Shown in pieces: positions 12,901-51,800 of a stretch of DNA of 64,000 bases (position 1 is the stretch's first letter; each line of letters starts with the position of its first letter). This DNA is from Phallusia mammillata (taxonomy: Eukaryota). The DNA is taken from positions 7,440,001 to 7,504,000 of the forward strand of contig OZ281498.1 of the NCBI GenBank assembly GCA_965637545.1. Direction: 5' to 3'. The notes under the pieces were generated by a model, which did no database searches, was not told the origin of the DNA, and was given only the letters and a program-made list of their open reading frames with translations. Made by a program: the position numbers and the translations under genes.

Positions 12901-15790
12901 TTCGTGCGGTGTGCTGCAGTTGTTTCCCTTTTTAGCCCTCACGCTTGTCACTATGTGTGGCATTCGCATCTTTCTTTTGAACCACATCGGTCGTTGGCAC
13001 TCGAGCGTTGCGCTATTGTTACGACTGTCACGCGAGTGAAGTGACATACTCCCCTTGCAGTTAAAACTTGCACTGTAGCATTCCACCTTCAGTGTACGAG
13101 ACCTTAAAAACTCTACATAAAGTTGCCATTCTATTTGAATAAGGTTAAAATTTCATGAAAGTTTTCGTCTTTTTAACAAACGTTTTGTATTCCAGGCCTG
13201 GAAGAGAGTAAGAGCATCGAGAAATGGAAACAGATCATCTTATCCCAAGACAAACTCCTGAAGGAGAAGCAGGAAAAGGTTGCATCCACCCATGTGGACA
13301 TCCAAAAGATCGAATCCGAGGTTCACCGATGGAGGACACAGACCCACGGAAAGAATTATGTCCAGGTAGCTACACGATTCCATATTAACAGAGATTTCTA
13401 TTTTCAATCGACAAAGCATTCCAAATCACATCTACGCTTGTCAACACTTATAACATAAAAATGCGATGGGCAAATGTTTAATGAGTGTATTGCACAAGCT
13501 TCGGTCTTTAGATAATGAGAACTAAACGTATTTTTATCTTCTGTAGGACACATACCTCTCCGGAATGGAAGCACCATCAGCAGCCTCAAAGTCTCGCTTC
13601 GGTTCCAACTCACTGCGTCCACCACAGTGGCTCGCCGAATGCCAGGACGCTGTTGCTCTAAGCGAGTACGTCGACTCCTGTCAAAAAGTGGTCGAGATGC
13701 AACTTAAGATTGAAGAGCACAAACGCCAGTTCGAGATCGTCCTTCAAGACATGCAGGACGAAGTGTGGAAGGCTTCCAATGATCCAAGTGCAAAAAGCCA
13801 GGCTGTAAACCCAATTACTGCAGCAGCATCGGCACTTGGTCTTGTACCCAGCAAAGACGATGGTGATTCAAGTGACGATGAGTCTAATACCAGGCACGAG
13901 TCGTTAATGGTTTCGAGCGGAAAGCAACAAAAATCCACCACTGACAATACCAATGACCGTGAGAAGATTGCCGCCGCTGAAGCTACACTAGAGGTGGAAC
14001 GGTCTAACACTGAAATGGAGGCTAACTTATATCTGAGCCTGCGTCTCTCCTCTGAACTCCAGGAGGTGGAACAGAAGATGGATTCCTCGCAGCGCTTGTT
14101 ACAGGTAATTTGCAGCAAACCATACCTTAAATCGAATAAAAGTAACATAACTAATTCATAGTACAGTAAAAGCTAAATAGAAACTGTAGCTAACCTTCTC
14201 ATTTTCACTTTTCAGGCAAAGGGAGAGACACTCTTGGCGATGGTCCGCAATCTCGCAGAGTCCCCAGACGGAATTTCGCCCGAGCTATGGGAAGAATACG
14301 GCGACCTCCTCACAGCATACGACGCCGAAGTCTCCTTGCAACGTTACCTAGCCGCGTGCGCCGATAACAAGGACGAAACATCGGCGAGCCAGTCAGAAGA
14401 CGCCGCAGCAGATGGTACTGACGAGCCCCTCTCTTCGCCAACCACATCAGCGCTCCATCACGCTTTATCACCTTGGCTGTGGTGCGAGCACTGTAAAATT
14501 GAGCTTGAACAACAGCAAAGAGGACATGCTTTTGACGGGCAAACACCACCTGTTTCTCCACATTGGATTAGCCACTCGGGAATGCCTTTAAATCTATCCG
14601 AGTTACCTCTCCCTTCGCCAACAGCAGTGACGTCGCCGCCGCGAGCCATCGCTCCCTTGCTGCCGATGCCACCGATTAACGTATGCAACGACAGCGACTA
14701 CGAAGATTTATCGAACGATAACAAAGGCGATGCCGCTACGTCAACCATAATATCGACGGAAAACGCGATACCTCGAGGCATGGTCCTGCGGCATTCAGGG
14801 CGCCACCAAAAGGACAAGCAGCAAATCGCCGCTCAATTGAACTACCTGGCCGTCAATCGTAACAACAGCGCCAACCATACCGATGATTCCGGCAATGCTT
14901 CTGCTACCAGTAGCCTTGCGAGTTCCAATAGCGATGGCGGCAGCATTGATATGGGAAGCAGAAATAGCAGCTGCGATGGCGGTTCCCCATGTCCGGGAGC
15001 AGAGAGCCAAGACTCCGGATCGTCTTCACCGTTTTTCATTCACGGCAAGCGCAGCGGCTGGATGTCGAAGTTTCCGTTTCCTCCAAAACACAACGAGGAC
15101 GGTAGAGGCAACTCAAGGTCACCTCTGCGCTACACACAACATCGTAGCAGCTCCAATGGCCCAATGAAACCTGTTGTTCCGCCTAAACCCAACGCAACCC
15201 ACTCCAACGAGCAAAAGCGTCTGCCTCGGCCCAGCAAAGATGATATGGATAGACTGCAGCAGCAGCAAAAGCTAATCAGGCGAAACAGTGGCGGTCGTAG
15301 ACGCAACCCAGCACCGACTAACGACGACAAGCAAGCTTTCGGCCGGCGAGCAAGCAGCTTTGGCAAAGCAGGTGTCGGTGTTTTGCCCAACCGTCTCAAC
15401 GGCCTTGTAAGTCATCCAATCGTCAACAACTCGCATTGCGATTTACGCCAACGGGACTCGTCGCAAAACAGAGGTGGCCAGAATAAGGTGCGTGCCGCCT
15501 CCACGAAGCCAAACTCTCAAATCGTCAACAAGGCCAAGCACCCTATGCGCCACGCGCCGTCTCCAATTGACATCATTTCGAATGTAGGGGGCGTCGCTTC
15601 TGCCCCCTGTTCACCCCATGGCTACCAGCACCAGAAGCTGCACCCGCGTGACCCACGGCGCATCCTGAACAGCGGAGACGTGAAGCGCCGTATCCACAGC
15701 GACACTTATGACAACGATTCAGACACTGGCCTTAGCTCGTTGCACAGCGCCGATTCGGATCTTGTCATGTATTCCGAAACGCTCGTTTAG
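5170..15790 (+). CDS. RASSF10: Ras association domain family N-terminal member, RASSF9/RASSF10-like; join(5170..6934,13196..13365,13547..14104,14216..15790), ~1355 aa
   Basis: N-terminal RA domain (TITVRMGREEKEISGLTRRTTCSDVLQALL...[38 protein letters not shown]), HGKNYVQ|DTYL motif across the exon 2/3 junction, coiled-coil segment, and C-terminal DSDTGLSSLHS...SETLV. All are hallmarks of RASSF9/10. GT-AG introns join in frame (phases 1,0,0). Confidence 0.9.
13128..13143 (+). other. Exact copy of the ascidian 16-nt spliced leader (ATTCTATTTGAATAAG) followed by GT
   Basis: 16/16 match to the Ciona SL exon; followed by GTTAAA; in RASSF intron 1, 52 nt upstream of exon 2. Confidence 0.85.
13196..13365 (+). 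CDS. RASSF10: RASSF9/10-like coding exon 2 (GLEESKSIEKWKQIILSQDKLL...HGKNYVQ)
   Basis: Acceptor ttttgtattccag, donor CAG|GTAGCT; 170 nt, phase 1 to 0; not in the ORF track. Confidence 0.9.
13547..14104 (+). CDS. RASSF10: RASSF9/10-like coding exon 3 (DTYL..., coiled coil)
   Basis: Acceptor tttttatcttctgtag, donor CAG|GTAATT; 558 nt, phase 0-0. Confidence 0.9.
14216..15790 (+). CDS. RASSF10: RASSF9/10-like coding exon 4 (ends ...DSDTGLSSLHSADSDLVMYSETLV*)
   Basis: Acceptor attttcacttttcag; open to TAG at 15788-15790; conserved RASSF9/10 C-terminal motif. Confidence 0.9.
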   Translation, partial: AKGETLLAMVRNLAESPDGISPELWEEYGDLLTAYDAEVSLQRYLAACADNKDETSASQSEDAAADGTDEPLSSPTTSALHHALSPWLWCEHCKIELEQQQRGHAFDGQTPPVSPHWISHSGMPLNLSELPLPSPTAVTSPPRAIAPLLPMPPINVCNDSDYEDLSNDNKGDAATSTIISTENAIPRGMVLRHSGRHQKDKQQIAAQLNYLAVNRNNSANHTDDSGNASATSSLASSNSDGGSIDMGSRNSSCDGGSPCPGAESQDSGSSSPFFIHGKRSGWMSKFPFPPKHNEDGRGNSRSPLRYTQHRSSSNGPMKPVVPPKPNATHSNEQKRLPRPSKDDMDRLQQQQKLIRRNSGGRRRNPAPTNDDKQAFGRRASSFGKAGVGVLPNRLNGLVSHPIVNNSHCDLRQRDSSQNRGGQNKVRAASTKPNSQIVNKAKHPMRHAPSPIDIISNVGGVASAPCSPHGYQHQKLHPRDPRRILNSGDVKRRIHSDTYDNDSDTGLSSLHSADSDLVMYSETLV

Positions 15791-21812: not shown

Positions 21813-24800
21813 CTAAATGTATATAAGAAATATTTTATGTATTATGAAAATCAGTGTGCGATTTATAAACCACCTTGAATCTCTGAGCTCTCTCAAAATG
21901 TTGCTCAAGTTTATGCGCATTTGGCAAATTGCTTCAGTGTTTTATTTTCTATATATTGGTGTTTATAACAACTACAAATAATTCGACTTACATTTAAATT
22001 CCTTGACAGTGACTTCAGCCGAGCAAGAAGCCTCTCCGAGTTCGTTTGCAGCTGAAACTGTGTAAACTCCGGCATCGCCAGCTCTTGCACGACGAATCTC
22101 CAGCTGGACGATTCCTGTAGCATAAAAAAATACAAGCTTATACACTGCAATAGTCGCATCCCTCATACAAATAGCATAATGATAAACTCGTTGGTCGATT
22201 AAACATGCTATACCGAATCAAGCCAGTCTAGCATTCCAATATGGCAAGGCATAGACAGGCTAGAACTATGGTGGCATTTGAACCCACGACAGAAGCCTTT
22301 CTGGAACAATGATAAACTGTTTGAGCTAACAAGTTCCCAAGATTTAATAACAGTACCCTACATTGACATTTATGATAGAAACTACAAAAAAATATAAGCA
22401 TATACGGTACCGTAAACAAGACTTCGTAACTATCAGTTGAATCATACCACGTAAAACCTTTTTAAACAGGACCAGTTTATGCAGCTTTGCAAACTTACCC
22501 ATAGCTTGAGTCATCTTGTACTTGGGGTTGTCAATAATTTCCACCTTATTCTTGTACCAACGGACTTTGGGACGGGGGTTGCACTTTAAAGCACAGCTCA
22601 ATGTCCCGTTGTAATTCTCCACAATACGTCGACTGTTCAAGACCTGAGTAAACTCGGGCTTGATACGGAAATCCATAGCAGGGTAATCGGGTTTCTTGTA
22701 CACAGTTTCTAGGAACAACAAAAACAAGGATCAGATTTTTAAGACCCTTTTTTGATCTGTATTGCCATATTGTTTCTTGTGGATGAAAAATACGGTAAAG
22801 CAACTTTAAAAATTTAGTGCAAACACGGAATGTTGTGTTACCTGCAAGTGTTTTCATGACTTTTAGAAGCAAAAATTGAAATAAACGTAAAATAACACTT
22901 TAAGATGTAAGAACAGGGTATGAATCAAAAAAATCTTGTGTGTAGTAACTGTGTGTAGCAATTTAGTGATGGGTCGAGTACCCGGTATCGATGATATCGA
23001 ACGATTTCAGTGGTATCGATACTCGTACTCGGTATCGAAATATTTTGCCTCAGTTTTCGATACCAACGTTCGAGTACCGAAGGCCGATTTAGACAATAGG
23101 AATACGGGCAACTTTATGCCAATATTTGCTTCGGATAGCACAAAATCGGGAAAAAGTTCCGCCAGGTTACGTATATCTTTTTCGCTATCACGGGGAGATT
23201 ACATTTTTCGGCATGTGTGTGTGCACGCCTGTACCCCGACCATGGCAGATAAATTAGCCAGTGATATACAACTAAGTACAACACTACACCTAAGTACTCG
23301 GTAATCGTACTCGGTATCGAAGGTATATACATGTAGTACTCGTACTCGGTATCGGTACTCGCTTCAAAACCTGGTATCGTCCCATCACCATATAGTATAT
23401 TATGTAGTCTTGAACTCTTGAGTCACCAGCAAAAATTTAAACATGTGATTAAACATTCACCCCAAACCTCCGTAGTCTAGGGATTTTGAAGGTCATGTTT
23501 TATTTACAAGGGACGTTTATGTGTAAACAGTTACTGGAAATTTAATTCATCAATCAAAATCAACCATTGTGTACAGTTTGTGTCATCTCCATCGAAGTAT
23601 TTGCATTCAAAACCCAACACAATCCCCAAAGCGGCAAGCACCAATAGAGATTACTATCGTAAAAAAGTCCAGCTATGCATATGACGTAATAAAGCGCTAA
23701 AAGTTACATAAGCCCCCAAATAGTTTTCGTGCCAAAAAAGGACGAAATTCGGGTCCGAGATGTCATGGTATCAATCATGTTTAACAACGAGTGTCGGCAT
23801 TCGTGGAGATAGCATCTGTTTATTTTCGGGGGCGACGCAGTAATTTGAAGAAATTTTGTAATTGGCTGCATTGCCCAGGCTAGTTTGACCTTTGCTGCTA
23901 TTTCATGTAAATGCTTGACAGTAGCCAAACTATTTGTACAAAAATGTGTTTAAAAACGAAGAAATTTGGAGTGAAAAAGCAGCGTACACTTCGACTGAAC
24001 CTCAATATTGTCAGTTCCTTATTAAATTGAAAAGATCCGTAGAAAACGTTCTACTCTCCTAACAACCTGAATTAAGACTAAACCTTAACGACGGAAAATG
24101 TGATTAACATATATCTCAAAACAATATTTTTACAATATCAAAACAATATGATATTTATAGATTTGGGTAACTTGTGGTATTAAATAATAGATATAGTACC
24201 AAGCCCACCATATAAACTACGCAGACAAGGGAAAAACTCACATTTGAAAATAAAGGTCTAACTGTCTTATGCGTCAAACTGTAGAATATGATTGGATTTT
24301 GCTTCAAGGTCTTTGGAAACTGATTTGCCGACAGAGGTCTTTCAACAAATCATATAAATTTGCTTTGCTTTGGTAAAACAACAAATTGGCCACAACAAAC
24401 TTACTTTCTTTCGGTATGTTTGCGCCATCCTTGGTTGCGTTTGATTCTCCCACACCGACTTCGTTAAAAGCTTTCACACGGAAGTAGTAATTGTTGCCCA
24501 ACACAAGGTCGCTCACTTGACATTGCTTGTGACGTAGTTTGTCGTACACAACATACCTGTGGACATTAGAGAAGGGTGGTGATTCTATTTGAATAAGAAA
24601 AAATCCACAAAAGGCTATCAAAAAGATATATTGATTAAACCTGTAATTTAACACAAAAAAATGAGTGGATTTTAATCTTTATTTTGCTATTAGTAACTCA
24701 ACAAATAAACTTCTACATCTATTTTTGTGCATATATATAACGAACAATGTATATATGCACCTAAAAATTAGTTATATTTTAACACATGGTATATTCCCCT

Positions 24801-27800
24801 AAAGTGAACAAATGAGAATCTAATTAAACGCACGTTTGATCATCATGCTATTTATGTGTACAATACGTTTAGGACCTAAACCTAAACTTTAGGTTATCAA
24901 GATATTTATCTGCATACGTTTGTTGAGGCTATTTCAAACACAGTAGTTAAGATAAGGTTTGCTATTTACCGTAATTACACTCCTAATTGCGTTATTTATA
25001 AATTACAACTACGTAATTGTAAATTGCTGTTTCAAGTGTGAAGTGAATTGCAAGAGGGCCAAGTTTATTGCGCGATTCTTGTCTTTCAGTGGAAAACGTT
25101 TCCACATCCGAAACGCATTGCGATCTTTATTGATACGAAGAAGCGGTTTAGACACAACGCCAACGCGCCGGAAACAGTGCAAAAAGGTGCAAAGTGCAAT
25201 TTGGTTTCTTTGCAAAATCATTCCTTTATGCAAACCAAATCGGAGATATACGTCAACGATAAAAGTGATTGATCGGTTAAAATCTTGATTGTTCGCCACA
25301 AAAAAATTGGCAGCACCCTGAGGCGCGAGAAGTAATGACGTACACCGGGTTGCAAGGGCGCGTGTTGCGGCAAAGAGGGCAAGAAATGCGCGCCGGACTC
25401 TAGGGAAGATCCGGGGCGAAGATAAGCACCGACTTTTGACAAATGAGTTACACGAAAATATGCGGCCACATGAAACGCAAGGCCCGAGCCGTGGATTACC
25501 AAAAACCTTGCGCCCAGGAGGCTCTTTGGAGGAGCAGGGGGGAGAAGAAGTGGGAAGAGTGGGATGTTGAGAAGATGAGTATCGCTTTAAGGCGCCGAGA
25601 TAAGGAATTGACAGCCACATGGCGTGGTGTGCAGAGTAAAAGGTGGCGATTCTATCACCAAAGTTCCGGTCGGAAATGGATTTTTGACGACTCGATTTTG
25701 CGTTCGATATGCAGCCAAATATAGTCAAGACGCCACCCGTAGTTTACTTCATAGGCGTAGGGCTACAACTCGTATCAAAACATGTTATTCGCGACAGGGT
25801 GGCATGAGGTAAACAGGTATCAGAATACATGACCTTTAACGAAGGCGGAAGTCCTTCAGTAATGCGCACGAGTCATAGGGACAAAAATATCCCAAACTTA
25901 TCTCAACGCAACCTGATCTAGAAAACAGTAATGCATAGGAAATAGATTTGCCCTAAACGGATGCTTGTAATGCAAATAAATGCCCTTACCGGATCTGTGC
26001 ACAATACTAAAACCACGCAAGATCAGGGTTTGATAACAAATAATGCGGGGCATTAAGTAGAACAAATTTTAGATTCCTACCGACAAGCGTTTGAGGCCAA
26101 ACGACTATCGGGTGATGACCACAAAATGTTTCAAAAAATGTTTTCCCGCAAGTCGTTAAATATCATAGCAATTTGGTGAAATATTTTTAGCAATGTACAG
26201 ATAGAAGCCTTTTTTAGTCATTTTGTCTCCGCAAATAGTGACTTCACAATAAATACAGAGCCCTGGCGAAATATTTTGCAGCATTTTATTAAAAATAAAC
26301 AGTTACGCAATTAAATTGTCTTTTCATCTTTGTTGGATTTGGAAAATTAAAACAAAGATGCAAGGCGAGTTTATGGTATGGTGTGGACTCATTGACGCTT
26401 AATCTTACATGCAAAGTGAAAAATAATTAGAAGGTACTTTATATACCCCAGTTAGATTTTTCGCGATTAGCAAAACGAGCGGTTATTCGGTACTCCATCA
26501 TATAATATGACAGGCGCCCGCGGAATTCAATCACTTGTGCTCAGAATAACGACAACAAACTTTGCGGGTGCGAAACGGAAAATCGGAGAACCCGGGAACT
26601 TTTACGTTAAAAGCCAAAGCCTGAAAAGCATGTGACCTACCTTCACCTATTAACCTTACGAAGCAACGTTTTAGTTTCTTGTTTTCAATGCAAGCTTGTC
26701 GGGTTCTCCATGTAGGCGCCAAAGTTTAAGTCGTCCATCATTATTTGACCGGGAAATGGCAGGTATCAGTATACTTTAGCATAGAAGGTCGCGTGGCGTA
26801 GGACAAGCACGGTCACCAGATAATCGGATTTTGCTTCAAGCAATTTGTGCGACTCCCTGTTTGTTGCCCGGCTCGACCGGAGTTGTCAAGCGAGCAATTC
26901 ATCAAGCTTAGGAAACGGTGTTTTGAGAGCAAAGTAAGCTTTGCTATTAACTGGATAATGGTTATTGTGTCGACGCCGTAAAGGTCCTTTGACCGACATA
27001 CGTTTTTCAAGCAACAACTTTAAATGTATTTTTTGTGTTGAGACCTTTCCAGCATATCTTTGAAATCAACCCGTTTAAACAAAACAACACGGTGTATTCG
27101 AATGGGTACAAATTTAAAGCTGATGCTAAAAACTAAGTATGTGTTGCTTTATCGAGAAAAGTTTTTATTGTAAAACCAAGTGATCTTGATCTAAGACAAT
27201 GTAAGTATAGAAGTGGGGTTTCATTTTTGAATAAGTATTTCTTGCGAATATGTAAAGTAGTAGTTAATGAATGGAAAGGGTATTTTACAGAGTCATTCTT
27301 ACAACCAAATGTTTTTCATTTTAAATCCAAAATTGTCGAAATCAAACCGAATCATTCAACTGCTGCCTTAAAATATATACCGAAGTTTCAAACAAAGCAA
27401 ATGGTCAGTATTGTGTTAATGTCACAAAAAATTGGGGCTTGGCGTTAGCTCTTAGTTTTAAACGGGCGTTAAAAGGTGGAAATTAAACAAGCACGATGAC
27501 AAAAATATCGCCACAGCTGTGATGCAACTCTCAGTGGTAGAAATTTTCCGGGGAGTGCCAAAACGGATGTTGAAAAGTCGCACAAACTGCCAATTTTAAG
27601 CCATCCAATACCCATTAATCATACGTCTCGTGCTTATCAAAGAACATCTGTTGCTAGAGTGATGCGGATTCTATCTCCTACCATCGTTTACTGCCCAAAT
27701 ATGCATCCGTTTACCGACATAATCCTTTTTAATGCATCGATATTGATGTGTTTGGCGTTTACCGAGAGGCACGACCTCTAAAAATCGGTCAAAGACGCTG

Positions 27801-30800
27801 ATTGGTCGGTGAGTTGGCACGTGCCAAGGTGATCACGTGTGCTGTGTAAGCAAACAGATTAACTCCGAGCGTCAGGTGTCTAAGTTGGCCGGTAACGCCG
27901 CGCTTCTAATCATGTGTGTTTAATCGCGATTCGAAAACACTTTAGAAAAGTTACTGTAACTATATTCAAATCGGCGCTTCTAAATTGAAACCCTTCCCTT
28001 CTAATCAAACATGTTTTGCATAACGGGATTAGGGAACAGACAACCGTCGGTGCTTGTGGGCAAGTCTTGCTTCACGTCAATCATCGGCGGCTAAGCAACG
28101 TAGGTAAAACCAAATCTATAAGTGGCGATTTTCGGGACTTAAATTATGTGGTTTTTGTAACTCGATACAAGAGGCGGGAAAGACAACCTCTGCGGTGAAG
28201 TTATTTTCGTATCATTTCGCCAATTCAGCGATATCCCGAGGCCAACAGTCGAGCGCAATATTCACTTTTCCGCCAGGGAGGTCTCAAGTTAATCTCCTTA
28301 AGCCAGCTTTATAAGGCGTTTTACATCAGCAAATTTTTTTCACGCAGAACATCGTAGTTCGAAACTTGCGGTAAGTAACGAGTTGTATTGAAATCGTTCA
28401 AAATAGAAACCAAAGTCTGAAAATACCCGAATTGCATGATGTATACACAAACGGTTCATATGACATTATCCACCTTTTCAAAACATTAAGATATCAACCC
28501 CTTTAACAATTCGAAAAAACACCACAACAAAAACAAGATTGTCTTCGTAAGATTGTTTCAAAAATAGCTTTACTGTGCATTGGTTGCCAACATCAGTGTA
28601 AACTGTTGTTTTTACCCCAGAATTCTAAACAAGTTTTTCATGTGTTTTCATACACAAACCCCTCAATTGAGGACCACTGTAAGCAACCTAAGATTTGCAC
28701 GATGTGGCTTTGTACCAGTTACGGTACAGTATTGTATTTCTTGTGTGCTGGGAATAGCGGAAACTATTGAAAGGGTTGCATGAAATATTGACGTTTAGAA
28801 ATGTGCAAATTTGCTTAAAGCTGGTCACCAAGCTTGAAATAGCAAAAAAAAGGACTTTTACAAGCTTGCTACATTGAATAAGTCCATCGAGTACCAGTCG
28901 CAGAGAAACATTGGTTCTGAAGAGTTATAGAACTCTATATGAATTAGTCAAAGGTTTTCTTTTAGATTAATGTAAGGTTGTTTGGCTTGCTTGTGAACTT
29001 CAAAAACCACTGGCCAAGAAAGGTAAAAAATTGCACACGTTTTGAGTCACGAAAACCCACTTAAGGTTTTTAACGTGGCACAATTGAGATCCGCACTTTG
29101 AACGACCTGACTCGGCACGCTCTAATCCGGATTCAAATGTTACAAATTCAGCCACACGCTAATTTTACCAACGCCGCTGTTGTTTGTACGCAAACGGCAC
29201 GGGCGCTTTCAAATCATAATCACCAAATTAGTTCCACAAGAGCGAAAAGGTCATTTCAGAGGGCAACGCATGTACAGAACGCCTCGAAATCCGATTTTGG
29301 AGCTATGTAACACCCGGAGTATGCCTAAAATCGGCTTGAAAAGGCCGCCATCAAAGCATAACTGACCACTGCTGCTGATGGACCAATTTCCATGCTACGA
29401 AATAATCCAGACGGTATGATGCAAAAGGCGTATTTGATTACACTAAACAGACAGATAATGTGAACGTGCATTTGCAGCCAGTCTGGTTTGAAAACTACAC
29501 CGGATATACACAAGCAAACGTTTTGGCGTTAATCGCGTATCGCAGTTTGTGCGTAGTGGTAACGCGATATTAAGCAAAAATAAACTTTTGTTAAATAATA
29601 TCTGTTGAGGGGTTCATTTTCGCGACACCGGTTAATTGAACACGTATCTTGTGCAAATATTTTTTCTGTATGGAGAGGCTGATTTTCGAGTGAGATATAT
29701 TAAAACAACAAACTATGTATCGATGCGTCCGTTCACGTGGCGTAAAATTATGCTTTTCAACACTGTACGTCATGACTTTTTTGGCACTGTTGAGAAATAG
29801 CATCCTTGTCATATTAAATAATAAAGGCAAAAACGCTCCAACTATTCTAGATTAGTTGAATCGAATCCAGGTATTTTAAAGCAAACAATTCAAGACCATT
29901 AATTATAAATTTTGATACGTTTAAAAACTAAACGGAATCAAAATGTAGCTATAAAATCCATTATTACATAAGGATAGGATCTTTAAATGGGTGTCGTACG
30001 CCCTAAAATCAGTAGATCTTATTTTATCTATGGACACTGCAAACAAACCAACGCCATATCTGAACAAGTCATTATACGATGAGTAAACTGAAAAAGTGCG
30101 AACCAACGATACTATCAGAGACTTTACTAAGATAACATGTTGTAACACTTGGTGACAATTCAGAAAGGTTTTTATGTCTCGAATTTCAGACAGTGTGAAC
30201 GTGGAACTGAATTAGTCTTATTCGGGAGCTACGTCTAGACATTCTTATCTCGCGTCCCAGTTGATTGGAACGCGATTGGCAACGAGAGAGAAAGAAGTAT
30301 AAAAGAAAAAAACAACTCTAAGCCACTGAAAGATTGATAAAATCTGCCAAAACGTAGCAGATCGACCACAAAAGGAGAATTTACATTGCGTAGGAAGTCA
30401 AATCAGTGTCAAAAACATGTTTGTTGGCTTTCGGAGGCAAAACATCCTGGTTCGTTAGAAAACTGGCAACTTGTGAATCCGGAAAAACCATATTAGGTCA
30501 TAAAAACAATCAATCTCATTTGAATGGCCAACAAAGTTTTGTGTCTCTAGAAGTCAAAACGTTTTTTTTTTGGGTCCCGTATTTAGTGATTTATGATGAA
30601 AGATTTGAGACAGTTCGATTACAGGCCAATCCTTTCGCAAATCAAAAATCTTTTCGATATTCAACGCAAAACTGGCATCTACAAGAACAATTTACGTCTA
30701 GGATAACTTTGACAGAGCAACAATTACACTACATTCTTTTGTTGGGTTCGAACCCATTACCCTACGAATCCCATCGTAGGTAAGTCAAACGTCTTAAACC

Positions 30801-33800
30801 ATTCGGCCAAGTTCATGCACATAGTTATGTCGTCCTATAGGACGTTTGGCAATAAAAGTAAAGTAACAGTCAAATACCGAAACACACTCAGAGATATTCC
30901 TATGTTTATATCACTGGCATAATCAATCATATTTTCAACCCGAGTAAAATACACCAACACCACAGCAACATTGAAACAGACACCTACCATTCATCGCTTC
31001 TTGCATCTCTCTTCTCAACCACGTATCCTAAAATATCCGTATTCCCGTTATCGCTTGGTTCCTCCCATTTTAGCGAGGCGGAATTTCCGACCACTTCGCC
31101 CAGTTTCACTTGTCGCGGTTTCGACGGGATATCTGGTTAGGGCACAAAAGCACGTATAAGTGTGAAAACGCGGTTTGCGGACTTGTAAGGGAATATGCAA
31201 GGCTAAATTTCAAAGTCACGGTTGATATAAACCCCATACTGGATGACTGTACTGCGTTTTGCGTTGAAAATTTTAGGTTTAGTGGTCGTTTTAGGAGATA
31301 TGAGAAACATACCTATTTGCGCTATTGTTACACACAGTGTTTTTTTTAAGGTGTCAAATTTCTCCAGCGGTTTCCCAAAATTTGAATTTGGCTATTTTTT
31401 GGTATTTAAATGAAACACTTGCGGTCTCTTAAAACTACTTAGCGGTCACCCAAACCAAACCTTAAAAAAAACCTGGTTACACACATAAAAAGAGCAATGA
31501 GATTCGAAATTATATGTTTTAAATGCTAAAGCAACATTTTGCAAGCTGAGCTGTTTTGAACTAGTTAATTTGGATGCTAGCTGTAATGAAGACATGTTAG
31601 AGCTAGATTGTGATGTAAAAACGTGGCTACGGAAATCCCATAAATTACTCACACCAAAATGAGTTATATTGCCTACACCAGTGTCAATAAAAAGTGATAC
31701 TGGGGCCACCCTTGACTAATGGGTGACGTCAAATTATATTTCATTTGAGTTTGCATTGAAACTTATAGTAAAACCAGTTATATATTGCCACTCACAAGAA
31801 CCTATAAATCATATAGTGTGTGATATTTGCTTAAATTATTTTCACATATCGTATTTTGTGTGATAAAAATAGAGCCGGTGATGTTGTAATGAAACATACA
31901 CGGGTAAACAAACACGTTACAGGTGATGTGAGGTGACCTGTGCCGGAAAACGCGGTTTTGGGGTGGCATTGAACCTTTTGAGAAATGGTTCTCGTTTTAG
32001 AGGAATGCAAAGTTGGGGCATAATTAGCAAAACGAAGGTGTTTGTCGCTGAAAGTAAATAGGAATGTGCAAATAGCAAAGTTATGGGTGACATGAGGCCA
32101 CCGGCAATGTGTGGTAGTTCAGCTGCTATTAGGGTTCTGGGTAGTTTTTGGTGGGTTATGAGAAATGCCTTGTGGAGTTTGTGTTAACTAGGTCAAGTAA
32201 GAAGGGTATCGTTGGGCTACAGAATGCCATAGAGCGCTTGGTCGTAAATTAAATGTCCTGATAACTTACGTTACATTTTTTGTGTAGAAGAGAGGATGCA
32301 ATATTGTGTTTATCACATTGCCCACCGAAAACACAGACTGATTCAAGTTTACTAAAAGCTTAGTTTTGTATGGTTATGATTTAGAATCTTTCTGTATTAG
32401 GCAAACGCGGTTAGAGCCGATTTCCATACGACCACAGTCTTACCTTGAGTAATGTACTACACATAATCAAATTTATATACCACTCACGTCACACTCACTA
32501 AATATTAAGACTGAAGGGGCACATGATGTCAAAATATAATGTAAGTGGCATTTTGGAAACACTTTGTGACTTTCTTGTATTTTATTAAGATATATATGTG
32601 TATTTTATTAAACTCAGAGGAGGTGTTTCAGATGTCGCATCGTCGCGATACACATAAAGCGATCAGAGTTGTTAGTCTTCAAGCTCCACTTTTATTAAAT
32701 GGACCTGATTCTGGCCTGTCTTCACACTATAAGTCACATTTGTGTCGCAATTTGGCCTTTATAAATGGCACTTTCGGACTTAATACGACTTTGTTTTAAC
32801 AAAAATTCGGTTTCGGGTAGAGTACTTTGGGGTTTGGGTCGGGTTTCAGGCGCATATATAGTTCTATAAGCCTTATCTTACAAAACCACATCGCGCAAGT
32901 AGAACAGGGCAACAAATCTAAAGGATTTACTGCCAAGGAATCGAAATTGTCGAATATTAACTTTGCGATGACGTAAGTTTTACGTAATCTGTTTTTGTCG
33001 ACCAAAATGTCACACTACGCAAATATACGAAGTCGTTCCCTCTAACAAAGTTACTGTTTACCACTTGGACTATGATGTAATATATTTTGAAAGGCAATGT
33101 TTTGATTCAACAACTGGATACGTGTGCGATATTGACCAACCGAAAAACACTGCAATTAGCGTGACGCAAAAACATCGACCGCGGACACCAAATAGGGGTT
33201 GTCGGCAAAAAAATACAAGAGAAATCCCGAATCACGTACGGCGTGGTCGCTTTGTATAAACGCGTGTTCCGGTAAGTCATGAAGATTGGCCGCTTTTCGG
33301 GATACGATACCATTTAAAATGCATTAGGCAGGCAAGACCTAAACAAAGCGTGACAGTTTAACGCGGCTACGAAGCGTCACTGCGGATCGAATCAGGCCTC
33401 TGATCAGAGATACGGCGCCCCACAAAACGGTCGATAAAGAGGTGATTTGGTCGCGAGAAATTCAGGCAAACACACCGGGAACGTGAAAAGTGCACAATCG
33501 GCGCGGATCTAAGTGTGACGCATTCGCGACTTTTTGGTGACTTGCGACGCGGTGTTGTTGTCGCACACAAAGATTGAAAGCGCGCCGCGCGGGGTGAAAT
33601 TAAAAGTTAGCGAAACCGCTTGAGTCAGATGTTCCCCGCTTGAGTAAGGTGTGGTGCCCGGTGGTTATGCTTGAACGCACACGCTTGCGTCACTACTGAG
33701 GGCTGTTTGGACTAAAAGGCGCAAGGATTCCATTTTTTGGAAACAATTTTGCAATAGAATTTGCGGCTTTGAATAATCTATATGGCGCCAGCGTTCGGTG

Positions 33801-48800: not shown

Positions 48801-51800
48801 ATTCAGCCGGTTTTGTGATAGAACCGGCTGGCAAAAAAAATGAATCCCACCACTGGGTTTATACGATGATGATCATTGTTAGATAGGAGCACCAATAGCT
48901 TTGTTTAAAGTCAAACGGGTGGCTTATACAAACAAAAGTATTTGTACGTATTTATAAAAACTATAAAACACTAAAATTAGGGTAAAAACATAAAAAATGC
49001 AAAACTATAAGCAGGAATTTGTATACGCTACAGACAGTGCACACTGTTTCGACCTGTAAGGTCCCATTAGTGCAGCTGGTGACGAGAGTTGCACTGAAGA
49101 GGCCCTACAGGTTGAAACAATGTGCACCGTCTGCAACTTATGTATTGGCTCGATGCTTTTGTGTGAGATTTTTTTATTTTCATAACATACCTTTAGATCA
49201 GAAAAAGGGCGCACAATAACAGCTTCGGGTTCTTGAACAAGCATTTCAGCGCAACTAGAGCTTCCGTTGGTAAGAAATTGATAAAATCCTTCGTCTTCGG
49301 GCGCAACCTTAAAATACAACAGCATTTGCTTACCTTTGAATATTACCTTATAAGGTAAACATATCAAATCCATGTTTTAAATGTTCAGAGGCGCACTAAA
49401 GAAACCGTAACAAATCGTTATTGGCGAAATTGTTTTATTAATTAGCGTGAGAAACCTATAATAGGCACTTCTAAATTCATTTGTGTTTACGTATGTGGGC
49501 AATTTGCAATAAATTGATTCGAAACCAACACTTTCAAAAAAAAACAATCTGCTTATGGCACAAACGCCCACACAAGTGTCACCTAAAATGTGCTGCTTGT
49601 TTATCAAATGCTTTCTGACAGGTGACAGAGTAATTTGGCAATGACAATGCGAAAATTGACGTGTATTGTAAACATACCAGGTTTAAAATACACAAATGAG
49701 CAATTAAAGGCGCCTTTAAAACCTCATTAAAACGACCAATTCGTTTGAAGGGTTAGTGTCGAATAGTTATGAAGAATAATAAGCTGTTGCTGCCACAATG
49801 TATAAAGGAGTATTGCACTTCCAGCAGTTTTATTACAAATAATCGACGTTTCGACGTCCTATAAGAGACGCCTTCTTCAGTATAATGGCATATCTAACAG
49901 TTTGACGTCGAAACGTCGATTATAAATAATTATTTGTAATAAAACTGCTGAAAGAGCGATACTCGTTCATAGCTATGAAGATATCCACAAAAGAATTTAT
50001 TATACGTCTGTAAAATATTACGTAACGACACTTGAAACATTACTTTAGCCGTTTAAGGTCTGTAGTTCAGAATAAAAAGTAGGTCGTTTACCCCGGCGAT
50101 GTTGAAAGTCACTTTAGCTCCTTCCTTCTTCACTTTAAATCTATCAGAAGATGGTAAGTCGATTCCGTCTTTCAAAATCTTGAACTTGCCATTTTCACTT
50201 GACATCTGATAAAAATAAATATAAATTTACAAGGATTCATAGTACGCAAGGATTGCTTTGAAGACCGGTTGATTCGGTACAACGTCTTCAATGGGCCTGT
50301 CGTATAAGATTTATATGTAAGAGTGCCGTGATCGCTGTCCAAATTAACGTTTCAGGGCTGATCTTAGGTATGCATAGATTAGGTATATGCGGAAATGGTA
50401 CCAAGTGGCAATAATATAATCAATGATTTAAAACAGGGTTTAAAGAAAAAAAAATACTGAACTTTTACAACAATATTATCATTGATGATTGAAAAATACT
50501 GTTTCATGACAAATTTTGAAATGAAGAAACACGTTTACACGTTTATACAAAAATATTTGAGTATATGTTGCACCCAAATGGCACCGCTATCGTCCTGTCC
50601 AAATCTAACATTAAATTACAGTAAATAGTGTCAGTTAAAAAATAAACGATTATGGGTGTTGAATTGCACGTGTCAAGTAGCAATTACGGTCATCAGCTAC
50701 GAACGCAGGATCAATTAAAATAGCCTCGAACGCCAAACCTACACAAAAAAACTTTATAATCAGTTAGAGCAATTTGTCAATTGCAGCAAGTTTTGACCAT
50801 ATACGCAAGCTTGCAGTGGGATTTTAACCCAAAACATCAACACATTTACATCCTAAGCACTTTAGCTGCAAAAGCGAGCTACAAATACGGTTGATATTTA
50901 CGCCCTGTCTGAGATAAGTTGAGACAAGGTTATCTTAGGTTACACTGACAAATGAAATGAAAAAATCTGACCTCGCATGTGAACTCAGCGTCACTTCCGG
51001 CTACAACCTGTACATCTTCGAGTCCCTTTGCAATAGTTACAGGTGGTTCTGGAAAAAATTACAACAGAATATATTACTAGGTAAAACAACGCCAGCATAC
51101 ATAAAAATTGTTAATCCGATATTTTTCGACCTATTTATATTTTAAAACAATTTTTGCTTAAAGTTAATAAGTTCTTAACAACACAACATGCAGCTTACAA
51201 TCGAGACCTATTTTAATCAAGTAAATACACAAATTATAGATAAGTTTTCAGTCCATTTACCTTGCACGAAAACTTCGCATGACGTCACATCCTTGCCGAC
51301 AACGCAAGTAAAGGTTGCGTCATCGTCCTTGGTCGCTTGGTCGATAATCAGATAACGCTTGTTGGCTGCGGTTGGAAACAAATGTTTGTCCGTTAGGTAG
51401 CGCAAAAGAAGCTTAAAATATTTAAGTACAATTTGACCATTCTCGATTGCTTTCATATAAACCAATTTCAAAGTTATGCATTTAGATTTAAGTAACTTTT
51501 TTTTCAAATTAGGTTGATACTTAATTTATTGACTTTATTAATTCATTTGTTTTAACCTTTTGTAACAATCTGGTATTGCTTTCCAGGCGTAATCTCGGCT
51601 CCGTTCTTCTGCCATTTCACGGTCATCTGTTCATTCGCAACCTCAGCTTCGAGAACAATCTTTTCACCCAAGTCCATCGACATTGTTTCGGGCAGTTTTT
51701 GAGCAAAAGCTGTAATGCAAAATCACACAGATTACGTTTTGTCCAGTGTATTCTGGTTTTTGCGGGATAAATACCCCCTGTAGAAAAGAACATTACAAAA

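What the first reader, a model, noticed from the sequence alone, without database searches (positions are those of the whole stretch)
24557..24603. Exact antisense copy of the spliced leader sits in the branch-point window of MyBP-C's longest intron
Seen: the plus strand at 24582-24597 is ATTCTATTTGAATAAG, so the MyBP-C pre-mRNA carries its perfect complement at -41 to -26 of exon 26, which follows the 6.4-kb intron 25. Known: this 16-mer is the Ciona SL exon that is trans-spliced to mRNA 5' ends. A chance 16/16 match in 64 kb is very unlikely (roughly 1e-4 by my estimate), and there are two, each beside the acceptor of one of the two longest introns in the window. Inference: the element could base-pair with SL RNA, either recruiting it to an internal acceptor (an SL-capped short transcript whose first in-frame Met would give a C10-only protein) or shielding a long-intron acceptor from ectopic trans-splicing. 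It could also be a neutral retro-inserted SL followed by A6.
Basis: partly seen in the sequence, partly recalled or inferred. Interest (0 to 1): 0.85.

Follow-up and report, generated by a model that had tools for sequence, protein, structure and literature searches.

The report
Stray spliced-leader copy in intron
A perfect 16-base copy of the sea-squirt spliced leader really does lie backwards just upstream of a muscle-gene exon, but it looks like a harmless, species-specific relic of a reverse-transcribed leader RNA, not a splicing control element.

Summary
ATTCTATTTGAATAAG, the Ciona spliced leader (SL), lies on the + strand at 24582-24597. That places its complement at -41 to -26 of a MyBP-C-like exon that follows a 6,431-nt intron. 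A second exact copy lies at 13128-13143. Chance predicts about 1.5e-4 exact copies per window.

The functional reading is not supported:
- RNA contigs from two runs show this acceptor spliced in cis to the upstream exon. No SL-joined form was seen.
- An SL-exon 26 mRNA would carry three out-of-frame upstream AUGs.
- The element is absent upstream of the orthologous acceptor in three other tunicates.

The copy stops exactly at both RNA ends of the SL exon (cap site and splice junction). It is followed by A6 and preceded by G, and its flanks are single-copy. It is unchanged in one independent DNA sample and present without an indel in a second.

A related tunicate holds at least 120 SL copies without a G (so no GT donor) after them. 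Most are fused to the 5' ends of repeat families, so SL-capped RNAs are often reverse-transcribed into tunicate genomes.

Best reading: a solitary, RNA-derived SL relic, probably neutral.

The scan has noted perfect SL 16-mers on other pieces of this genome (nebulin, ERG and Netrin-4 introns, LINE 5' ends).

The parts
24582..24597 (+). Exact copy of the 16-nt Ciona spliced-leader exon. Its complement lies in the MyBP-C-like pre-mRNA at -41 to -26 of the exon 26 acceptor.
   Evidence: Identity with the published SL: PMC1488885 Table 1. Identity with the other window copy stops exactly at both ends of the 16-mer.
24598..24603 (+). A6 run directly after the SL. On the gene strand it reads T6 directly 5' of the SL complement. 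It is a possible A-tail or priming site of a reverse-transcribed insert. No GT donor is present.
   Evidence: The priming role is an inference.
24581..24581 (+). G directly 5' of the SL, possibly copied from the cap.
   Evidence: G is the -1 base in 63 of 121 SL contexts in a related tunicate, and in 6 of the 7 displayed SL copies of the KH assembly (SLFinder supplementary figures). The real SL gene has C there (taaggcATTC). Suggestive only.
24557..24558 (-). Acceptor AG of intron 25, used for cis-splicing.
   Evidence: RNA contigs X6 and X7 end at 24557 and continue into the sequence at 30989-31018.
24405..24556 (-). Exon 26, encoding the second half of an Fn3 domain.
   Evidence: Joint 22708-24405 and loose end at 24557. 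Pfam fn3.
24557..30987 (-). Intron 25, 6,431 nt, GT..AG. Its sampled 3' part (24557-27800) is single-copy in DNA runs.
30988..31136 (-). Exon 25, encoding the first half of the same Fn3 domain.
13128..13143 (+). Second exact SL copy. It is sense to a + strand coiled-coil gene, followed by GTTA, and ends 52 nt upstream of a CAG|exon boundary at 13195/13196. Its flanks are unrelated to those of the 24582 copy.
   Evidence: No Sm motif AGCTTTGG nearby. SL+GTT is also seen at SLFinder KH loci 8, 12, 16 and 18.

Best explanation
The 16-mer is a solitary, RNA-derived relic of the spliced-leader exon.

Proposed origin (inferred): an SL-bearing RNA was reverse-transcribed in the germline and the short cDNA was fixed in intron 25 of the MyBP-C-like gene. 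The template was either a trans-spliced mRNA whose 5' UTR begins with A's, or an A-tailed free SL exon. Synthesis was most simply primed from the T-run of the intron's pyrimidine-rich 3' region.

What is shown:
- The copy begins exactly at the SL cap site and ends exactly at the SL splice junction.
- It is followed by A6.
- It is single-copy in context.
- It is carried by both other DNA samples laid, unchanged in one and without an indel in the other.
- It is absent in three other tunicates.

Consequence (inferred): it is a passenger. In antisense orientation it still offers a T-run and a CUUAU branch-like motif, and cis-splicing of exon 25 to exon 26 proceeds normally.

Not shown: the enzyme involved (LINE reverse transcriptase versus capture during break repair) and the exact template.
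For: (1) Exact RNA boundaries.
- The match to the SL, and to the other window copy, stops at base 1 and base 16.
- The real gene reads taaggc|SL|GT. Here the flanks are ggtg|SL|aaaaaa. A DNA fragment of the SL repeat would not be expected to break at both RNA ends.

(2) No functional SL-gene features.
- There is no GT after the SL and no AGCTTTGG Sm motif nearby.
- Rfam finds nothing relevant in 23500-32000.

(3) The flanks are single-copy.
- DNA word depth around the site is 273-302 in X2 and 30-32 in X4. The repeat at 22885-23475 reaches 1e5-1e6.
- No RNA contig at 85% likeness or more lies on 24658-24854. The RNA depth of bin 24461-24657 is fully accounted for by the exon.
- So no mRNA or element body follows the SL.

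(4) It is real DNA and fixed in the samples seen.
- A 2,167-nt contig of X2 carries the site with differences only at 23690 and 24220.
- A 7,996-nt contig of X4 carries the site with no indel there.

(5) It is lineage-specific.
- Orthologous acceptors in L001-L003, L004 and L005 (82%, 79% and 72% exon identity) lack the element.
- Those loci hold no SL match at up to 2 mismatches.

(6) The generating process is common.
- SLFinder lists 38 SL loci in the KH assembly. Seventeen have no donor, and nearly all of those are inside or beside protein-coding genes.
- 'Pseudogenes ... are rife in this organism' (PMC7986045).
- In host contigs of a related tunicate, at least 120 stretches carry an SL with no G (so no GT donor) after it.
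- Most are fused to the 5' ends of four repeat families. The -1 base is G in 63 of 121 contexts.
Against: - There is no target-site duplication. The 30-nt flanks share no exact 5-mer. A textbook target-primed insertion is therefore not demonstrated.
- The A-run is only 6 nt and may already have been in the intron.
- Only 3 of 121 SL contexts in the related tunicate are followed by four or more A's. Solitary SL+A copies are an uncommon class.
- No empty-site allele or sister-species sequence was available. The insertion is inferred, not seen.
- Both window copies lie within 70 nt of an acceptor. Under random placement this is unlikely, by my rough post-hoc estimate of the order of 0.1-1%. The model explains it only partly, through T-rich intron 3' ends acting as priming sites.
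Confidence: 0.7

Rival explanations
1. Functional anti-SL element. The 16-nt complement in the pre-mRNA pairs with SL RNA. It would then either tether the SL snRNP so that the SL is trans-spliced to exon 26, giving a short SL-capped mRNA for a C10-only protein, or mask the branch region of a slow, long intron.
For: - A perfect 16-bp duplex is possible, at -16.9 kcal/mol at 37 C.
- The element lies at -41 to -26, a usual branch-point distance, and contains CUUAU.
- The first in-frame Met downstream does open the C10 Ig domain.
- Both window copies lie close to acceptors.
- An unchecked scan note (s1-364017) reports an SL-complementary element at the same intron position in two paralogs.
Against: - RNA contigs of two runs show only the cis junction exon 25-exon 26, at full exon depth (336 and 93). 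No SL-joined form was seen. Contigs can miss rare forms.
- An SL-exon 26 mRNA would have three out-of-frame AUGs. The third opens a 31-codon frame that overlaps the in-frame Met.
- The element is absent at the orthologous acceptor in three tunicates.
- The second window copy is sense to its host gene, not antisense, so the two copies do not share a pairing mechanism.
- The local fold is unremarkable (z = -1.4).
Confidence: 0.06
2. The SL is the 5' end of a longer retro-insert on the + strand (a retrocopy of a trans-spliced mRNA, a LINE, or a ribozyme-type element). The body would extend rightwards from 24598 and is now decayed or unrecognised.
For: - This is the usual context of SL copies in the related tunicate: SL fused to repeat families.
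- It is also the usual context in the scan's notes on this genome (LINE 5' ends, retrocopies).
Against: - The sequence after the SL is single-copy in two DNA runs and draws no RNA contigs at 85% likeness or more.
- It has no ORF beyond 45 codons.
- It has no similarity to any SL-linked family in 120 loci or to anything else in the window.
- A perfectly preserved 16-mer next to a fully decayed body is unlikely.
Confidence: 0.1
3. Same RNA origin but a different route. A short SL cDNA, or SL RNA itself, was captured as filler during repair of a chromosome break (end joining), without a retrotransposon endonuclease.
For: - There is no target-site duplication.
- The insert is very short.
- The exact RNA boundaries still hold.
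Against: - Nothing positive distinguishes it from target-primed insertion with target-site loss.
- The T6 on the gene strand directly abutting the SL complement is what priming on an A-run would leave.
Confidence: 0.12
4. An orphan SL RNA gene or a DNA-level fragment of the SL tandem repeat, or a chance match.
For: - Dispersed SL RNA pseudogenes are reported for this organism (PMC7986045).
- The 13128 copy has gene-like neighbours: C at -1 and GTT at +1 to +3.
Against: - At 24582 there is no GT donor, no Sm motif and no similarity beyond the 16 nt.
- Chance expectation is 1.5e-4 per window.
Confidence: 0.02

Closest known systems
Dispersed SL copies and SL RNA pseudogenes of Ciona (Yeats et al. 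2010, as cited in PMC7986045; SLFinder Supplementary Table 5, PMC7346339)
   Same: Exact SL 16-mers outside the 264-bp tandem SL gene array. Many lack a GT donor, and most lie inside or beside protein-coding genes.
   Different: Those lists are uninterpreted. None is described as a solitary SL exon with exact RNA boundaries, or as lying antisense next to an internal acceptor.
Relict DinoSL sequences in dinoflagellate genomes (PMC5585692, PMC6050394, PMC12014239)
   Same: A genomically fixed spliced leader is the signature of reverse transcription of a trans-spliced RNA.
   Different: In dinoflagellates the SL heads a whole retrogene. Here only the leader (plus A6) was fixed, inside an intron and antisense to the host gene.
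snRNA retropseudogenes and U6/L1 chimeras of mammals
   Same: A small abundant Sm-class nuclear RNA is copied into DNA, often 3'-truncated and followed by an A-rich run.
   Different: The template here ends at the splice junction. It was therefore a spliced or cleaved SL exon, not the whole small RNA. No target duplication is seen.
Engineered pre-trans-splicing molecules (SMaRT) with an antisense binding domain against the target intron (PMC11401238 turned up in the search; not read)
   Different: This is an analogy of mechanism only. Nothing here shows that the natural SL RNA is tethered or that the acceptor is trans-spliced.

Membership tests
Functional Ciona SL RNA gene | SL exon directly followed by a GT splice donor | tested here: not met
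   At 24582 the SL is followed by AAAAAA. The 13128 copy does have GT.
Functional Ciona SL RNA gene | Sm-binding motif AGCUUUGG within about 25 nt of the donor (PMC7986045) | tested here: not met
   The motif occurs only at 15356, 34416, 35093 and 56972, nowhere near either copy.
Functional Ciona SL RNA gene | Membership of the 264-bp tandem repeat unit | tested here: not met
   The flanks are single-copy. There are no repeats around the site.
Retro-inserted relic of an SL-bearing RNA | The copy begins at the RNA 5' end and ends at an RNA processing boundary | tested here: met
   Identity stops exactly at SL base 1 and base 16. The neighbours differ from the gene's.
Retro-inserted relic of an SL-bearing RNA | A-rich 3' tail | tested here: inconclusive
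   A6 follows the SL, but it is short and may have been present before.
Retro-inserted relic of an SL-bearing RNA | Target-site duplication | tested here: not met
   The 30-nt flanks share no exact 5-mer.
Retro-inserted relic of an SL-bearing RNA | Absent from the orthologous site in relatives (empty site) | tested here: inconclusive
   It is absent in three tunicates, but their introns cannot be aligned, so no precise empty site is defined. No sister-species sequence could be reached.
Conserved cis-acting splicing element | Conservation at the orthologous position | tested here: not met
Conserved cis-acting splicing element | A detectable splicing outcome (SL joined to exon 26, or altered use of the acceptor) | tested here: inconclusive
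   Only the cis junction is seen in RNA contigs of two runs. Contigs drop rare forms, and raw reads were not available.

The most novel reading that the evidence does not exclude
Antisense SL relics that land just upstream of internal acceptors are sometimes co-opted. By pairing with the abundant SL RNA they would bring the SL donor to an internal acceptor, or mask its branch region. This would give tunicates a cheap, lineage-specific way to make SL-capped truncated isoforms (here a C10-only MyBP-C) or to tune splicing of long introns. The present data do not exclude low-level use.
Probability: 0.05. Interest if true: 0.75.

Novelty: new member of a known kind. Interest (0 to 1): 0.25.

Why it matters
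As a relic, it is one small molecular fossil. It shows that in Ciona even the bare spliced-leader exon, and not only whole trans-spliced mRNAs or retroelements, can be copied back into the germline genome. It also shows that such an insert is tolerated in the branch-point region of an essential muscle gene.

There is a practical point. Genomic SL copies next to real acceptors can mislead mapping of SL-anchored 5' ends and gene-model building.

If the unlikely functional reading were true, it would be the first natural case of a pre-mRNA recruiting its spliced leader by base-pairing.

Tried and rejected
- **Rfam.** The whole window at gathering scores gave nothing. 23500-32000 at E up to 5 gave only a chance snoRNA-like hit.
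- **Flanks of the two SL copies.** Aligning them shows no similarity beyond the 16-mer.
- **Degenerate SL copies.** At 3 mismatches there are 4 extra matches against 1.7 expected, which is not informative.
- **Target-site duplication.** The search found none.
- **Local pre-mRNA fold.** Not significant.
- **SL RNA reference sequence.** I could not obtain it. Vandenberghe 2001, Matsumoto 2010 and Yeats 2010 are not held. No paper holds the RNA spelling of the SL.
- **Orthologue of the exon next to the 13128 copy.** None found in the fetched loci (tblastn) or in the protein search. Conservation of that copy is untested.
- **Hammerhead test on the related tunicate's SL-linked repeats.** No Rfam match at gathering score in ten loci. 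One chance-level hit to an unrelated bacterial sRNA at E up to 1 in L020.
- **Sister species or empty-site allele.** The protein route returned only species with 72-82% exon identity. The sequencing runs offered were all one organism and contigs only.
- **First attempt at look-up of sequencing runs.** It failed because the service was busy.

Full report
**1. The observation**

The + strand at 24582-24597 reads ATTCTATTTGAATAAG. A G precedes it and AAAAAA follows it. This is the 16-nt spliced leader (SL) of Ciona (PMC1488885 Table 1; PMC7986045).

Allowing up to two mismatches, the window holds exactly two matches. Both are exact and both are on the + strand, at 13128-13143 and 24582-24597. Shuffles give 0.13. 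From the window's base composition I expect 1.5e-4 exact matches per 64 kb and 0.28 per 120-Mb genome.

**2. The gene context**

- RNA contigs from runs X6 and X7 join 22708 to 24405. They stop at 24557 with a loose end that maps to 30989-31018.
- Exon 26 is therefore 24405-24556 on the minus strand. Intron 25 is 24557-30987 (6,431 nt, GT..AG).
- The SL complement therefore lies at -41 to -26 of the acceptor, as claimed.
- The two exons flanking the intron encode the two halves of an Fn3 domain.
- The next exon matches cardiac MyBP-C residues 1166-1229 of 1274, the C10 domain.
- I did not verify the exon numbers or the claim that these are the two longest introns of the window.

**3. It is real DNA and fixed in the samples seen**

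- A 2,167-nt contig of run X2 (a different study) covers 23443-25609. It has two differences, both listed elsewhere.
- A 7,996-nt contig of run X4 covers 23364-27800 with 23 substitutions and two indels. All indels and 21 of the substitutions are listed, and none is at the site.
- DNA depth around the site is single-copy: 273-302 in X2 and 30-32 in X4. The repeat at 22885-23475 reaches 1e5-1e6.
- No allele lacking the element was seen.

**4. What the copy is not**

It is not an SL RNA gene.
- It has no GT donor and no AGCTTTGG Sm motif nearby.
- Rfam finds no match.
- It has no similarity to the other copy or to anything else in the window beyond the 16 nt.

It is not the head of a recognisable longer retro-insert.
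- The sequence to its right is single-copy.
- No RNA contig at 85% likeness or more lies on 24658-24854, and the depth of bin 24461-24657 is fully accounted for by exon 26.
- There is no ORF of note.
- It matches none of the SL-linked repeat families found in a related tunicate.

**5. What the boundaries say**

The similarity begins at the first base of the SL, the cap site. It ends at the last base, the splice junction.

The authentic gene reads taaggc|SL|GT. Here the context is ggtg|SL|aaaaaa. A DNA fragment of the SL repeat would not be expected to break at both RNA ends. The template was therefore an RNA in which the SL exon had already been separated from its intron part. That means either a trans-spliced mRNA or the free SL exon.

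On the gene strand the arrangement is T6 followed directly by the SL complement. A cDNA primed from a T-run on an A-run just 3' of the SL would leave exactly this. That step is inference.

The G at -1 is compatible with a copied cap. G is the -1 base in 63 of 121 SL contexts in the related tunicate. It is also the -1 base in 6 of the 7 displayed SL copies of the KH assembly (SLFinder supplementary figures). The real gene has C there.

Against a textbook target-primed event, there is no target-site duplication. The A-run is also short.

**6. How common such copies are**

- Published pipelines already list dispersed copies. SLFinder found 38 SL loci in the KH assembly. Seventeen have no donor, and nearly all of those lie within or beside protein-coding genes.
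- The SLIDR authors call pseudogenes 'rife' in this organism.
- The scan's own notes record 22 SL observations on other pieces of this genome. These include introns of nebulin, ERG and Netrin-4, LINE 5' ends, a full retrocopy, and copies fused to ribozyme-like motifs. They are unchecked leads.
- I tested the general idea on independent DNA. Nearly all are in host contigs of the same few tunicate-associated samples that also hold the MyBP-C orthologue.
- Of 123 distinct contexts, most are the SL fused directly to the 5' end of one of four repeat families. A few look like mRNA retrocopies, for example SL+AAAAATGG....
- So SL-capped RNAs are reverse-transcribed into tunicate genomes on a large scale. 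A solitary SL is the minimal product of that process.
- Solitary SL+A-run copies are a minority: 3 of 121 contexts.

**7. Tests of the functional reading**

- *Splicing.* Both RNA runs show the exon 25-exon 26 cis junction at the full depth of the exon contig (336 and 93). There is no SL-joined contig. Contigs drop rare forms, so low-level trans-splicing is not excluded.
- *Coding sense.* An SL-exon 26-27-28 mRNA has out-of-frame AUGs at positions 19, 50 and 145. The third opens a 31-codon frame that overlaps the first in-frame AUG at 201. Such a leader would translate C10 poorly.
- *Conservation.* The orthologous exon was recovered from three other tunicates: L001-L003 at 82% identity, L004 at 79% and L005 at 72%. 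None has the element upstream of its acceptor. None has any SL match at up to 2 mismatches in up to 20 kb. Their introns cannot be aligned, so this shows lineage specificity but not a precise empty site.
- *Pairing.* A 16-bp duplex of -16.9 kcal/mol is possible. The local fold is unremarkable.
- *Branch signals.* The element contains CUUAU at -41 to -37. A better CUAAU lies at -13 to -9, outside it. The true branch point is unknown.
- *The two copies do not share a mechanism.* The 13128 copy is sense to its host gene and carries a GT, whereas the 24582 copy is antisense.

**8. What remains unexplained**

Both window copies lie within 70 nt of an acceptor. By my rough post-hoc estimate this is of the order of 0.1-1% under random placement. 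T-rich intron 3' ends acting as priming sites would explain part of it. Only a genome-wide count can settle it.

**9. Verdict**

The favoured functional interpretation is not supported.

This is a new member of a known kind. It resembles the dispersed SL relics and pseudogenes of Ciona, and is analogous to DinoSL relicts and snRNA retropseudogenes. Interest is low to moderate.

Noticed in passing
window 13128-13195: Second exact SL copy. It is sense to a + strand coiled-coil gene and followed by GTTA. It ends 52 nt upstream of a CAG|exon boundary at 13195/13196. Its neighbours look gene-like: C at -1 as in the real SL gene, and GTT at +1 to +3 as at SLFinder KH loci 8, 12, 16 and 18. There is no Sm motif. 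It could be a cis-encoded leader with a 52-nt intron. No RNA data were laid there, and no orthologue was found.
   Followed up: partly
window 22885-23475: A very high-copy repeat in the intron between exons 26 and 27. DNA word depth is 1e5-1e6 against 30-280 for the flanks, with dozens of variant contigs and internal joints in all four runs. It is also present in the RNA runs.
   Followed up: no
L020:527-620 and about 55 other loci (for example L055, L057, L059, L098): In host contigs of a related tunicate, the SL is fused directly to a repeat that begins AGCTGATGATGCCTAC..GTAGGCGAAA. This resembles a hammerhead core (CUGAUGA, a stem, GAAA). A second family (L011, L063, L083 and others) begins ATGATAGGACTGACGATGCG..GTGAAA. 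Rfam gave no hammerhead match: none at gathering score in ten loci, and only a chance hit to an unrelated bacterial sRNA at E up to 1 in L020.
   Followed up: partly
L058, L069, L009, L039, L015, L076, L062, L036 (30 nt upstream of the SL): In many copies of the first family the SL is itself preceded by a shared sequence, GTGCGGCTTTTAGCAATCTTTCTGTAACAG. AG is the commonest dinucleotide before the SL overall (41 of 121 contexts). In these copies the SL lies inside a larger repeated unit, right after an acceptor-like AG.
   Followed up: no
L012:716-826 (minus strand): Two exact SL copies bracket a run of degenerate SL-like pieces separated by A-runs (SL-A6-C-ATTATATTTGAAAC...ATTCTATTGAAAAAAAC-SL). 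It looks as if SL units were copied one after another.
   Followed up: no
L041 (SL on the minus strand at 2547-2563): The SL is followed by AAAAATGGATTTTATCAATTTACTTGGACAACGG.... An AUG opens 5 nt after the leader, as expected for a retrocopy of a trans-spliced mRNA.
   Followed up: no
L001-L003: Metagenome samples filed as microbial communities hold 14-22-kb host contigs of a tunicate. These include its MyBP-C orthologue, with 82% identity in exon 26. They are a usable source of comparative tunicate sequence.
   Followed up: partly
window 49027-49139: The scan notes a pair of hammerhead ribozymes here. Rfam at gathering scores reported nothing anywhere in the window.
   Followed up: no
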